A DNA stretch of 62,981 nt, the filler included, from Octopus bimaculoides (taxonomy: Eukaryota), in the NCBI RefSeq assembly GCF_001194135.2. It is 4 parts of 4 records of this genome, joined end to end, with 100 filler letters (N's around TTAATTAATTAA, not from the genome) between each part and the next. Parts side by side here need not be neighbours in the genome. Positions count along the whole stretch, not along the records: positions 13,701 to 38,431 come from NC_068987.1; 3 more parts are not named here. One strand, written 5' to 3'. Below the pieces are notes generated by a model. The model saw only the letters and a list, made by a program, of their open reading frames with translations, ran no database searches and was not told where the DNA came from. Made by a program: the position numbers and the translations under genes. Below, one piece after another: positions 18,641-21,663 of the stretch. The number at the start of each line of letters is the position of its first letter. Positions within the stretch are counted from its first letter, which is position 1.

Positions 18641-18784
18641 GAATACAACAACGTCGATATTATTCTCAGAAACGTACGTGGACATCACAGCAATCTTAAT
18701 ACCAATATAGCCGCACACGTCACAGGTGTTGCTTACCGATATACTCAATCTGATGTCCTGCATTATACTTGGCCAAAGACAAAG
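18641..18784 (+). CDS. MMACHC: MMACHC-like paralog A, exon equivalent to human exon 3 (EYNNVDIILRNVRGHHSNLNTNIAAHVTGVAYRYTQSDVLHYTWPKTK)
   Basis: Long poly-T tract, then tggtttcag|GAA; donor AAG|gtatgt. 144 nt, phase 0/0. AAHVTGVAYRY...DV...W matches human AAHVAGAAYYY...DV...W. Confidence 0.88.
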
Positions 18785-19415
18785 GTATGTAGACATAACC
18801 GATTCTTGTTGATCGATAATTTTTCCTATAAATTACGCAAATGTACTTGCATAGCAAGTGAGATGCAGCACGAAGTTTTGTCAATGAACAAGTCGCGGTT
18901 TCAAAACGACGAAAATATTTTAATACAAATGAAATTTAAATGTTGAAGACTAACTATGGGTTTTTGTGTGTTCTTTGAATGGCTTGCAAACATCTTCCAC
19001 CGCTGCAACATGCTCGTACACACAAACCTATGTGCGTGCACACATTCACACACACACACATATACATGTATATATTATTTCATTGAAGCCGAAAAAAAAA
19101 AGAAAAGAACTCCACACACTCTTGCTCACAGTTTCACTTAGCCGTTCATCAAGCTGTTGTGATAAATCAAACTACTCTGAGTAACAGTCTGTAAAGTATA
19201 TTTATTCTTTGGACTCCAGTAAAGTAGCATTTTACTCCACCTTTAATATTCGAGTACTATTCTTTCCCATTTTGTTTTGCGCCTATGGGCTCACCTGCGT
19301 GTTAGAGAGAGTGAAATTCGAATCATAGGTATGTCAGTTCATTATAGAAAATATAACAGAAAAGTCCAATTCTTCCATTGCATGTAACACGGGCAACGCC
19401 GGGTATCTCTGCTCG

Positions 19416-19475
<60 letters not shown>

Positions 19476-20861
19476 TGTATGTGTGTGTGTGTGTGTGTGT
19501 AAGTATGTATGTATGTATGTATGTATGTATGTATGTATGTATGTATAGAGTGTACTGTTCCGTTATTGGCAGGATCAACAAAAATATATTCCATCCAGCG
19601 AGAGATAAATATTATTTAATAAACACAATATTTATATGCGAGCTACTATGAGTGTCACGCTCGGATAATAACAGTAATCGAACATGCTTGTGTAGTGTAG
19701 TGTATACGAGTCTGAACGATGACAGGATTGTAAAGTGAATCTCGAAGCACATAAAGCTATAAATTATAGAGTACGAATATTAGATTAGATCTCCTTCGGA
19801 TAGAAAAAGTTGAAGGCTCCTCGTGGAACTTTTCTACCCCTAAGTGTTTCAGCCCAATATTTAAACGTTATTATTTGTAGCTGCATTTGCTTCGAGACTA
19901 AAAGGAATTATTTCACGTTCTCGAAGTTTTTAATTTCTTATGACCTCAACATCATACAATTCTCTCTGGTGAGAATAAAGTTTTTAAAACGAATTGAGAA
20001 ATTTGAAGGATTGCTTTAGCTAACTAGTAGAGCACAACATGCTTACTTCGAGATTCGCCGTCCACACACATACACACACATGTATGTACATATATTAGTG
20101 TTTATTTTTATGTTCAGTTATAATAAAATCAATTTTATATTAATCTGATGGATTACTCCATTCTTTTGTACAGCGCAATTTTTTCATTCTTATACAAGAA
20201 TGTTGTTGACAGCGACTTCGAAGTTTTGGCTAACCAACCCATCGTCGGTCTTGCTTTTATATAGTTTCTGTTGAGTTCAAATCATCTATGGCCTACAGCA
20301 GACCCCCAAGTGCCACCTCTTTAAAAGTGTCGTCCGGGGCAGACCGCCCTCCACCCGTTACTATAGTGGATGGTAATTAGGTTTTTGTAGTCAGTTGTTA
20401 TGGAAAGGGGTTTTGGAAAAATTTTCATTGATTACATTTGGGGCTATGTTAGTATTTGGAATTTATTCATGCGTATAGCAATTGGTAAACAAACTTGTAG
20501 GTGTTTCTCTTTAGATAAGTGGGCACAAGGTTTGAAAGTATTTTGGGCGCTTTTGGTATTACTGGATTTAATCCTTTCGCTTTGACAATATAATATCTAA
20601 GGGACAAAGCCCAGTATTTAAACCCTTGGTAATTGGACTTGTCAACTTATTTTTTCACAAAAGAATGAGGGGATGTGGCAAGTTTAGGCTGGTCTTCTCT
20701 TTACCTTTGAGCTTTATATTGTCAAAACAATTATTTTATACTTTTACGCTGGCAAAAATGGAATTTATTTCATCATTCTTCGTAATTAAAAAAATCGGTG
20801 ACGTCAACACCAAAGATTAGATAATAATAAAAAAAAATAGCCAGAAATTATTATCATGTAT

Positions 20862-21258
20862 AGGCGCAGGAGTGGCTGTGTGGTAAGTAGTTTGCTTACC
20901 AACCACATGGTTCCGGGTTCATTCCCACTACGTGGCACCTTGGGCAAGTGTCTTCTACTATAACCTCGGGCCGACCAAAGCCTTGTGAGTGGATTTGGTA
21001 GACGGAAACTGAAAGAAGCCCGTCGTATATATGTATATATGTGTGTTTGTGTATCTGTGTTTGCCCCCCCCCCTTCCCCCACCATCGCTTGACAACCGAT
21101 GCTGATGTGTTTACGTCCCCGTAACTTAGCGGTTTGGCAAAAAGAGACCGATAGAATAAGTACTAGACTTACAAAGAATAAGTCCTGGGGTCGATTTTCT
21201 CGACTAAAGGCGGTGCTCCAGCATGGCCGCAGTCAAATGACTGAAACAAGTAAAAGAG
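20862..21258 (+). mobile_element. SINE family B, full length, ending about 37 nt upstream of the copy A terminal exon
   Basis: ggcgcaggagtggctgtgtggtaag...ccgggttcattccc (tRNA-like head), core gtggcaccttgggcaagtgtcttctac, 3' end ggccgcagtcaaatgactgaaacaagtaaaaga. Confidence 0.9.
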
Positions 21259-21294
21259 TATGTGTCATCATGATGTCTTCTCATCTATTTACAG

Positions 21295-21663
21295 AAGCCG
21301 CTTGAATTTGCAGTCCACCACAAGTATGGCGCATGGTATACTGTCCCAGCAGTGATTGTTTTTCGAGATTTCAAACTGCCCAGTCTTCTTTATCCTCTCC
21401 CATTCGATGCCCTTCCATCTCATGAACACAGAAGATATGTTCTACAGTCGCTTCACAATGGTACTATGGAATGGCGACATGCTTCTTTTATGCCAGGAAG
21501 GCAACCGTTTTCTGAGGAAGCAAAACAATATTTCTCTTCAAAATTTAATCAGAGAATTTCAATAGTTAAAAAAACCAAACAATCATGCAAAGAGGGGCGA
21601 TTCACGTATTTCTTTAAGCATATTCTTCCAGCCTTTATGCCTATTTTAGGATGTTGTATGTGA
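21295..21663 (+). CDS. MMACHC: MMACHC-like paralog A, terminal exon (KPLEFAVHHKYGAWYTVPAVIVF...FSEEAKQYFSSKFNQR...ILGCCM*)
   Basis: Acceptor catctatttacag|AAG; open to TGA at 21661-21663 (122 aa). H..YGAW, PFD, W, SEEAKQYFS and QR match human HPRFGGW, PHD, W203, SEEQKAYFS and QR230. Confidence 0.88.
   Translation, partial: KPLEFAVHHKYGAWYTVPAVIVFRDFKLPSLLYPLPFDALPSHEHRRYVLQSLHNGTMEWRHASFMPGRQPFSEEAKQYFSSKFNQRISIVKKTKQSCKEGRFTYFFKHILPAFMPILGCCM

What the first reader, a model, noticed from the sequence alone, without database searches (positions are those of the whole stretch)
18641..21663. Copy A has lost cobalamin-pocket residues as well, so it may be a CblC-fold protein with a different ligand
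By-eye alignment to recalled human MMACHC: G147 is Glu (GAA, 21304-21306), G156 is Ala, P152 is His and W200 is Thr. The D104-Y-E-x-H-P-N-R-R-P-K-I-L-A-Q-T segment becomes LRNVRGHHSNLNTNI, YYYQ becomes YRYT, and DPVD(77-80) becomes DIDY. Established, as I recall it: human G147D abolishes cobalamin binding, and residues 104, 115-118 and 129-131 contact cobalamin. The structural scaffold (WYN, PDMF, AAHV.G, G.W, W203, SEE.K.YFS, R230) is retained. Inference: copy A may bind another cofactor or ligand (flavin, a different tetrapyrrole) or act as a non-catalytic partner.
Basis: partly seen in the sequence, partly recalled or inferred. Interest (0 to 1): 0.7.

Follow-up and report, generated by a model that had tools for sequence, protein, structure and literature searches.

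The report
Divergent octopus MMACHC paralogue, pocket rewritten
This is a real, conserved octopus-only extra copy of the vitamin-B12-processing enzyme MMACHC that keeps the enzyme's fold but has replaced most residues that hold B12 and glutathione, so it probably no longer does the standard B12 job.

Summary
The window is Octopus bimaculoides DNA. Copy A (+ strand, exons 17064-17258, 18641-18784 and 21295-21663) encodes XP_014782767.1. It has G147E (GAA 21304-21306), P152H, G156A, W200T, YYYQ>YRYT and DPVD>DIDY, and a rewritten loop 104-119 that is 3 residues shorter.

In a proper alignment, copy A matches only 27 of 53 near-invariant MMACHC columns. Thirty-three named canonical proteins match 44-53, and copy B matches 41. 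Twenty of the 26 derived states are identical in the Argonauta hians orthologue, which has intact exons and the same tail-to-tail gene order. Long-term dN/dS is about 0.17, so this is a constrained gene, not decay. The AlphaFold model keeps the CblC fold (pLDDT 88.6, TM about 0.8 to human MMACHC).

A and B both belong to an octopod-specific MMACHC cluster, and all its members lack R161 and R206. The canonical MMACHC lies on another chromosome. In O. vulgaris and O. sinensis, copy A is split by an inversion flanked by transposon copies.

Loss of canonical cobalamin and glutathione binding is well supported by inference. No evidence here points to any particular new ligand. This is a new variant of a known kind, of moderate interest.

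The parts
17064..17258 (+). Copy A exon 2 (65 codons, VQWYN...KKIQQ). It corresponds to human residues 28-92 and carries DPVD>DIDY.
   Evidence: AG|GTG acceptor and CAG|gtaagc donor. tblastn hit to human MMACHC. 100% match to XP_014782767.1.
18641..18784 (+). Copy A exon 3 (48 codons, EYNNVDIILRNVRGHHSNLNTNIAAHVTGVAYRYTQSDVLHYTWPKTK). It holds the rewritten and shortened 104-119 loop and YRYT in place of YYYQ.
   Evidence: The stretch SNLNTNIAAHVTGVAYRYTQSDVLH is identical in Argonauta.
21295..21663 (+). Copy A exon 4 (122 codons plus stop). It carries G147E, P152H, G156A, R161P, W200T, R206A and Y215F, and a hydrophobic C-terminal tail.
21304..21306 (+). GAA codon: Glu at the position of human Gly147.
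   Evidence: E is present in all three copy A orthologues. It is never D or E in 79 other family members.
20860..21250 (.). Dispersed SINE-like repeat inside intron 3 of copy A. It is not part of the gene product.
   Evidence: Further copies at 13713-13903 (94% identical), 18254-18532, 26432-26639 and 37971-38183. ARAGORN finds no tRNA.
22182..22523 (-). Copy B exon 4 with its stop codon, tail-to-tail with copy A. It keeps G147, P152, GG and W200 but has R161P and R206A.
25431..25580 (-). Copy B exon 3. It keeps QTAAHVSGAAYYYQ, with D104S.
28664..28870 (-). Copy B exon 2 (VRCYN..., with W30 changed to C).

Best explanation
Copy A is a functional, lineage-restricted paralogue of MMACHC/CblC. 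It lies in an octopod-specific tandem cluster and arose before the Octopus-Argonauta split.

It keeps the CblC fold. It has replaced the residues that canonical CblC uses to hold base-off cobalamin (G147E, Q131T, Q118N, L116N, Y129R, D104 lost, loop 104-116 shortened, W200 lost). It has also replaced glutathione-pocket residues (R161P, R206A, D80Y, Y215F) and MMADHC-contact residues (N110 and R112 in Octopus, R111 to His in all three orthologues).

The most likely consequence is that it no longer carries out cobalamin decyanation or dealkylation. That job falls to the canonical MMACHC on another chromosome. Copy A is kept for a different role that uses the re-lined pocket (conserved E147, H152, H111 and R129 beside the retained H122 and H151) and a new hydrophobic C-terminal helix.

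Shown here: gene structure, orthology, conservation of the derived states, purifying selection, and fold retention in a model. Inferred: loss of cobalamin and glutathione binding. Unknown: the new ligand or partner.
For: - Identity and structure: 100% match to XP_014782767.1. Exons are intact with canonical splice sites.
- Family and fold: Pfam PF16690 at 132.6 bits against a cut-off of 27. AF2 model pLDDT 88.6 and pTM 0.81. Foldseek TM 0.77-0.81 to 3SOM, 3SC0 and 5UOS.
- Outlier status: 27 of 53 near-invariant columns matched, against 44-53 for canonical proteins and 36-41 for B/C. The deviations are enriched at ligand-related columns, p = 0.009.
- Conservation: the Argonauta orthologue has four intact exons and the same A-> <-B synteny. 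Twenty of 26 derived states are identical there.
- Selection: Obim-Ahia dN/dS is 0.17, bootstrap 0.08-0.30, with dS about 1.8. Under neutral substitution the ORF stays open in 3 of 5000 runs at d = 0.3 and 0 of 5000 at d = 0.7.
- Back-up gene: canonical MMACHC is present elsewhere in O. bimaculoides, O. vulgaris and Argonauta.
- Literature: G147D abolishes CNCbl and OHCbl binding. Q131 hydrogen-bonds cobalamin. R161, R206, R230, D77, D80 and Y215 bind glutathione (PMC9464900, PMC11910325). N110, R111 and R112 contact MMADHC (PMC12501144).
Against: - No binding or activity data exist, and I could not inspect model coordinates, so steric exclusion of the corrin is an inference.
- Position 147 tolerates P, S, A and T in some family members.
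- Recent dN/dS between O. bimaculoides and O. vulgaris is 0.7, bootstrap 0.38-1.54, which cannot be told from neutral.
- In O. vulgaris and O. sinensis the gene is split by an inversion, and a second O. vulgaris copy is truncated with an insertion in exon 4. The gene is therefore dispensable in at least one lineage, or those assemblies are wrong.
- The canonical exon 1 was not found in O. bimaculoides, but a 1.1-kb assembly gap lies just upstream of the piece.
- I examined no expression data. RefSeq isoform models are the only hint of transcription.
Confidence: 0.6

Rival explanations
1. Copy A is a decaying or recently released duplicate (an incipient pseudogene). On this reading, its pocket changes are the debris of relaxed constraint.
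For: - Obim-Ovul dN/dS is 0.7, with a confidence interval that includes 1.
- The gene is split by an inversion in O. vulgaris and O. sinensis. A second O. vulgaris copy is truncated and interrupted.
- RefSeq models start with a non-canonical first exon, and the canonical exon 1 is not detected.
Against: - ORFs and splice sites are intact in O. bimaculoides, Argonauta, an unidentified octopod (Logan SRR11869390) and even the split O. vulgaris exons.
- Long-term dN/dS is 0.17.
- Twenty of 26 derived states are frozen since the Octopus-Argonauta ancestor, including a 25-residue block that is identical.
- Neutral simulation closes the ORF almost at once.
- The AF2 model is confident.
Confidence: 0.12
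2. Copy A still binds and processes cobalamin, but with an altered binding mode. For example, E147 or H152 could act as a lower-axial ligand, or a thiol other than glutathione could be used.
For: - The fold and the invariant H122, H151, the AAHV.G motif, W157 and W203 are retained.
- CblC enzymes of distant animals differ in their chemistry (PMC11910325).
- Position 147 is not strictly invariant.
Against: - The human G147D change at the same site abolishes binding (PMC9464900).
- Q131, Q118, L116, D104 and W200 are lost at the same time, with a 3-residue loop deletion and loss of two of the three pocket arginines.
- A canonical MMACHC already exists in the same genome.
Confidence: 0.13
3. Copy A binds a different small ligand (flavin, another tetrapyrrole or a metal) in the re-lined pocket, or it is a non-catalytic partner of B/C or of canonical MMACHC.
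For: - The derived pocket residues are conserved rather than random: E147, H152, H111 and R129 are the same in Octopus and Argonauta.
- Copy A is physically linked and convergent with B, in conserved synteny.
- It has a new hydrophobic C-terminal helix.
- There is a precedent: MMADHC is a CblC-fold relative with a non-processing role (PMC4705923).
Against: - No result here identifies any ligand or partner.
- The conserved dimerisation cap described for the AdoCbl-bound human structure (PMC9464900) is, from my recollection, formed by the PNRRP loop, and that loop is itself rewritten and shortened in copy A.
- Residues that contact MMADHC are lost (PMC12501144).
Confidence: 0.3

Closest known systems
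Human MMACHC / CblC (PDB 3SC0, 3SOM, 5UOS; Pfam PF16690)
   Same: Same Pfam family (132.6 bits) and same fold in the model (TM about 0.8). It shares the WYN, PDMF, AAHV.G, H151, G155, W157, W203 and SEE.K.YF motifs.
   Different: About 25% identity. It carries G147E, P152H, G156A, Q131T, Y129R, Q118N, L116N, T119I, D104 lost, loop 105-107 deleted, W200T, R161P, R206A, D80Y and Y215F. The disordered Pro-rich tail is replaced by a hydrophobic helix.
Canonical octopod MMACHC (O. bimaculoides P0170, O. vulgaris P0012, Argonauta P0025)
   Same: Same family and same genomes.
   Different: It lies on a different chromosome. It matches 44-49 of the 53 conserved columns, including G147, R161, R206 and R230. 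Its Pfam score is 263.6 bits and it is about 48% identical to shark and mollusc MMACHC. Copy A is about 30% identical to it.
Neighbouring cluster paralogues B and C (window copy B; O. vulgaris P0005 and P0006; Argonauta P0007 and P0009)
   Same: Same tandem cluster. They share R161P/L and R206A and group weakly with A in an NJ tree (53% bootstrap).
   Different: B and C keep G147, P152, GG, W200, Q118 and YYYQ, matching 36-41 of 53 columns. They have W30C, which A lacks. A is 34% identical to B.
MMADHC / CblD
   Same: It is a precedent for a CblC-fold relative that does not itself process cobalamin (PMC4705923).
   Different: There is no sequence or structural match of note. Foldseek to 5CV0 gives E = 1.6 and TM 0.21. 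Copy A is clearly a CblC-type protein, not a CblD-type one.
R161D-type molluscan MMACHC forms (Sepia pharaonis P0031, Crassostrea virginica P0241 and P0255)
   Same: They are also MMACHC-family proteins lacking R161.
   Different: They keep R206, G147, P152, GG, Q118 and YYYQ. They are not close to A (31% identity or less).

Membership tests
MMACHC/CblC family (Pfam PF16690) | Profile match above Pfam's gathering score | tested here: met
   132.6 bits against a cut-off of 27, covering profile positions 9-215 of 216. PDB phmmer gives E = 1e-24 to human MMACHC.
MMACHC/CblC family (Pfam PF16690) | CblC fold | tested here: met
   AF2 model with pLDDT 88.6 and pTM 0.81. Foldseek TM 0.77-0.81 and rmsd 2.3-2.6 Å to 3SOM, 3SC0 and 5UOS. 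This is a model, not an experimental structure.
Functional cobalamin-processing CblC enzyme | Cobalamin-binding determinants: G147 and Q131 (literature), plus the family-invariant positions D104, L116, Q118, T119, Y129, P152, G156 and W200 | tested here: not met
   All are replaced: E147, T131, R/G104, N116, N118, I119, R129, H152, A156 and T/N200. Residues 105-107 are deleted. Residue roles come from PMC9464900 and PMC11910325.
Functional cobalamin-processing CblC enzyme | Glutathione pocket: R161, R206 and R230, plus D77, D80 and Y215 | tested here: not met
   P161, A206, Y80 and F215 are found in all copy A orthologues. R230 is kept only in O. bimaculoides (T and K elsewhere). D77 is kept.
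Functional cobalamin-processing CblC enzyme | MMADHC-contact loop residues N110, R111 and R112 | tested here: not met
   G-H-H in Octopus and N-H-R in Argonauta. The interface is defined in PMC12501144.
Functional cobalamin-processing CblC enzyme | Binds cobalamin base-off and catalyses decyanation or dealkylation | not testable with these tools
   This needs recombinant protein and spectroscopy.
Orthologue of animal MMACHC | It is the copy that is orthologous to MMACHC of other animals | tested here: not met
   The canonical orthologue P0170 is on a 192-Mb chromosome, while copy A is on a 110-Mb chromosome. Copy A sits on a long branch with the cluster paralogues.
Processed or unprocessed pseudogene | Disabling mutations, lost splice sites or neutral evolution | tested here: not met
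   There are none in O. bimaculoides or Argonauta, and omega is 0.17. In O. vulgaris and O. sinensis the locus is rearranged.

The most novel reading that the evidence does not exclude
Octopods evolved a small family of MMACHC-derived proteins (A, B, C). The most divergent, A, uses the CblC fold with a pocket re-lined by Glu, His and Arg and a hydrophobic C-terminal helix. On this reading it binds a non-cobalamin ligand (another tetrapyrrole, a corrinoid analogue or a metal) or acts as a membrane-associated adaptor. That would be a natural repurposing of a B12 chaperone fold, conserved since the Octopus-Argonauta ancestor.
Probability: 0.25. Interest if true: 0.7.

Novelty: new variant of a known kind. 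Interest (0 to 1): 0.5.

Why it matters
The papers I read treat MMACHC as a conserved cobalamin-processing enzyme whose function is predicted to be the same across animals (PMC11910325). I found no paper linking it to octopus or cephalopods.

A conserved natural variant that carries the equivalent of the pathogenic G147D change and also lacks two of the three pocket arginines would be useful in two ways. It is a ready-made test of which residues are truly needed for cobalamin and glutathione binding. It is also an example of a B12-chaperone fold taking on a new role.

There is an annotation consequence. RefSeq names copies A and B 'cyanocobalamin reductase / alkylcobalamin dealkylase'. For copy A that name is probably wrong.

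Tried and rejected
- Canonical exon 1 of copy A or B. I searched with tblastn using human, Argonauta, O. vulgaris and O. sinensis N-termini. None is in the piece. The weak hits at 24255-24293 (+) and 31000-30977 (-) are chance: the first lies in low-complexity sequence and the second in a retroelement gag-like ORF. In the chromosome assembly the RefSeq X1 first exon lies 1.3 kb upstream of the piece. A 1131-N gap abuts the piece, so whether the canonical exon 1 exists in O. bimaculoides cannot be decided.
- Copy B as the canonical reference. Rejected, because it belongs to the paralogue cluster.
- Copy A-like genes outside octopods. An exhaustive phmmer search of 1.84 billion representatives found nothing above 34% identity except octopod fragments.
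- A contact list from the primary structure papers. Koutmos 2011 and Gherasim 2015 are not held. I relied on reviews and later papers instead.
- The hydrophobic tail as a transmembrane anchor. Kyte-Doolittle means of 1.25-1.36 in Octopus and 0.63 in Argonauta, which I judge too low to call a transmembrane segment. I leave it as an observation.
- YN00 estimates failed for the saturated Octopus-Argonauta pairs, so NG86 was used.
- The NJ tree does not resolve where the cluster branches relative to the cephalopod canonical genes (support 17-53%).
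Full report
**What is there**

The piece (13701-38431) is Octopus bimaculoides genomic DNA. It is 100% identical over 13701-31663 to chromosome CM046607.1 of GCA_001194135.2.

A tblastn search with human MMACHC finds two convergent gene copies.
- Copy A is on the + strand, with exons 17064-17258, 18641-18784 and 21295-21663.
- Copy B is on the - strand, with exons 28870-28664, 25580-25431 and 22523-22185 (stop at 22184-22182).
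- All exons are phase 0 with AG/GT boundaries.
- The joined copy A translation is 100% identical to XP_014782767.1. Two further RefSeq isoforms exist.

The first coding exon of both genes lies outside the piece. For copy A, the RefSeq X1 first exon is 1.3 kb upstream of the piece edge. A 1131-N assembly gap abuts the piece, so the canonical GF(D/E)xHPF exon 1 can be neither confirmed nor excluded in this species. That exon is present in Argonauta, O. vulgaris and O. sinensis.

**Checking the observation**

The human sequence I recalled agrees with the PDB chains over residues 28-240.
- G147E (GAA 21304-21306), P152H, G156A, W200T.
- YYYQ>YRYT and DPVD>DIDY.
- A rewritten 104-119 segment that is also three residues shorter.

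I aligned 33 named canonical MMACHC proteins: molluscs, annelid, brachiopod, arthropods, echinoderm, cnidarian, tunicates, amphioxus and vertebrates. In that set 53 columns are at least 85% conserved.
- Canonical proteins match 44-53 of these columns.
- The cluster paralogues B and C match 36-41.
- Copy A matches 27.

| Position | Conserved in |
|---|---|
| G147 | 32/33 |
| P152 | 33/33 |
| G156 | 33/33 |
| W200 | 31/33 |
| D104 | 33/33 |
| Q118 | 33/33 |
| D80 | 32/33 |

In a broader, unnamed set of 79 sequences, position 147 does vary (G62, P10, S3, A1, T1) but is never acidic. The refutation condition is therefore not met.

Copy A's deviations are enriched in columns that the literature ties to ligand binding: 10 of 12 against 16 of 41 (p = 0.009).

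Beyond the cobalamin-side residues, copy A lacks two further sets.
- Glutathione-pocket residues: R161 (P), R206 (A), D80 (Y) and Y215 (F). The human arginine triad R161/R206/R230 and D77/D80/Y215 bind glutathione (PMC9464900; PMC11910325).
- MMADHC-contact residues N110, R111 and R112 of loop 104-116 (PMC12501144). These are G-H-H in Octopus and N-H-R in Argonauta.

G147D does not bind CNCbl or OHCbl, and Q131 hydrogen-bonds cobalamin (PMC9464900). Loops 103-115 and 196-203 re-order on cobalamin binding (PMC9464900, figure 9 legend).

**Is it a live gene?**

The Argonauta hians orthologue (locus L001) has four intact exons with canonical splice sites. It lies tail-to-tail with a B-like gene, the same arrangement as in the window.

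Twenty of copy A's 26 departures from the family consensus are the identical residue in Argonauta. These include E147, H152, A156, P161, A206, Y80, F215, N116, N118, I119 and R129. The block SNLNTNIAAHVTGVAYRYTQSDVLH is identical between the two.

Octopus-Argonauta dN/dS is 0.17 (bootstrap 0.08-0.30) at a saturated dS of about 1.8. Copy B gives 0.12.

Under substitution-only neutral simulation the 235-codon ORF survives in 4.8% of runs at 0.1 substitutions per site and in fewer than 0.1% at 0.3.

Pfam scores copy A at 132.6 bits, against 193 for B and 264 for the canonical octopus protein. An AF2 model built on a 44-sequence alignment has pLDDT 88.6 and pTM 0.81. It superposes on human MMACHC structures with TM 0.77-0.81.

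Copy A is therefore a constrained gene that keeps the CblC fold.

**Caveats on constraint**

Between O. bimaculoides and O. vulgaris both A and B evolve fast. Omega is 0.7 for A (bootstrap 0.38-1.54) and 0.5-0.7 for B.

In O. vulgaris locus L002, copy A exons 3-4 and a B-type exon 4 are inverted relative to A exons 1-2. The inverted segment is flanked by a 2.5-kb inverted repeat that is 98.2% identical. Each arm carries a FAM200/ZBED5-like transposase ORF. O. sinensis, an independent assembly, shows the same A2-> B4-> order.

A second O. vulgaris locus (L006) has an intact B next to a truncated A'. That A' has a SINE-like insertion of about 220 bp in exon 4.

Either copy A has recently become dispensable in that lineage, or both assemblies mis-orient the segment. 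The A exons there are still open.

**Genomic context changes the framing**

Neither copy in the window is the canonical MMACHC.
- O. vulgaris carries at least five MMACHC-like gene models on one 128.5-Mb chromosome, plus a separate canonical gene (P0012) on a 215-Mb chromosome.
- Argonauta has C, B', B and A within 40 kb, plus a canonical gene (P0025) elsewhere.
- O. bimaculoides has its canonical gene (P0170) on a 192-Mb chromosome, while copy A is on a 110-Mb one.
- The canonical octopod proteins keep G147, R161, R206 and R230. They are about 48% identical to shark and bivalve MMACHC.

All cluster members (A, B and C) share R161P/L and R206A. B and C additionally have W30C and D104S but keep the cobalamin-side residues.

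An NJ tree gives 100% support for the copy A clade on a very long branch, 99% for B+C, and only 53% for A+B+C.

An exhaustive search of 1.84 billion representatives found nothing above 34% identity to copy A outside octopods. Cuttlefish and oyster have other R161D-type forms, but these keep the cobalamin-side residues.

**How it most likely works**

Shown: a conserved CblC-fold protein with a rewritten pocket, and a canonical MMACHC available in the same genome.

Inferred: with Glu at the G147D disease site, loss of Q131, Q118, L116, D104 and W200, a shortened lid loop, and two of three pocket arginines gone, copy A cannot bind base-off cobalamin or glutathione the canonical way. It is therefore not a decyanase or dealkylase. 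It is also unlikely to dock MMADHC, because that complex depends on a Co-S bond to bound B12 (PMC12501144).

The derived residues (E147, H152, H111 and R129, beside the retained H122 and H151) are conserved, so the pocket seems to be used for something. Octopus copy A proteins also end in a hydrophobic helix that B and the canonical proteins lack: Kyte-Doolittle 1.2-1.4, and AF2 helix 199-234.

Which ligand or partner is involved is unknown.

**Novelty and verdict**

No paper in the held library mentions MMACHC together with octopus or cephalopods.

The context needs correcting, because this is a paralogue cluster and not a canonical gene with a degenerate copy. It is a new variant of a known kind, of moderate interest.

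Noticed in passing
L002 8202-10702 and 23270-25769 (O. vulgaris OX597820.1, around 58.83-58.87 Mb): A 2.5-kb inverted repeat, 98.2% identical, with a FAM200/ZBED5-like transposase ORF in each arm. It flanks an inverted segment holding copy A exons 3-4 and a B-type exon 4, so both genes are split. O. sinensis shows the same order.
   Followed up: partly
L006 29568-30177 and 32830-32970 (O. vulgaris): A second, truncated A-type copy sits next to an intact B. Its exon 4 is interrupted by an insertion of about 220 bp that resembles dispersed repeats in the window (14878-15032, 34460-34575, 37650-37756). Its exon 3 is one codon shorter (141 nt instead of 144).
   Followed up: partly
window 22182-28870 (-) and orthologues: Copy B and its relatives (C) have W30C (VRCYN), D104S, R161P/L and R206A, conserved between Octopus and Argonauta. 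The 'normal-looking' copy has therefore also lost two of the three glutathione-pocket arginines.
   Followed up: partly
window 21592-21660 (C-terminus of copy A): The last 20 or so residues are hydrophobic in Octopus species (FTYFFKHILPAFMPILGCCM; Kyte-Doolittle 1.25-1.36) and are modelled as part of one long helix. The tails of B, C and the canonical proteins are hydrophilic or basic.
   Followed up: partly
window 20860-21250, 13713-13903, 18254-18532, 26432-26639, 37971-38183: A dispersed SINE-like repeat family, with one copy in intron 3 of copy A. ARAGORN finds no tRNA.
   Followed up: partly
window 30950-31570 (-), 35492-37349 (-): Retroelement remnants: gag-like ORFs with a CX2CX4HX4C zinc knuckle and a fragment resembling reverse transcriptase, broken by assembly gaps at 34713-35071 and 35871-36140.
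   Followed up: no
P0031 (Sepia pharaonis), P0016 (Logan), P0241 and P0255 (Crassostrea virginica): MMACHC-family proteins with R161D and EEH in place of the EEQ motif. They may represent an older molluscan variant lineage. The NJ tree does not resolve their relation to the octopod cluster.
   Followed up: partly
L009 10163-11293 (O. bimaculoides CM046607.1): A 1131-N assembly gap lies directly upstream of the piece. In O. vulgaris the canonical exon 1 of copy A lies 3.6 kb upstream of exon 2, which here would fall in or near this gap.
   Followed up: yes
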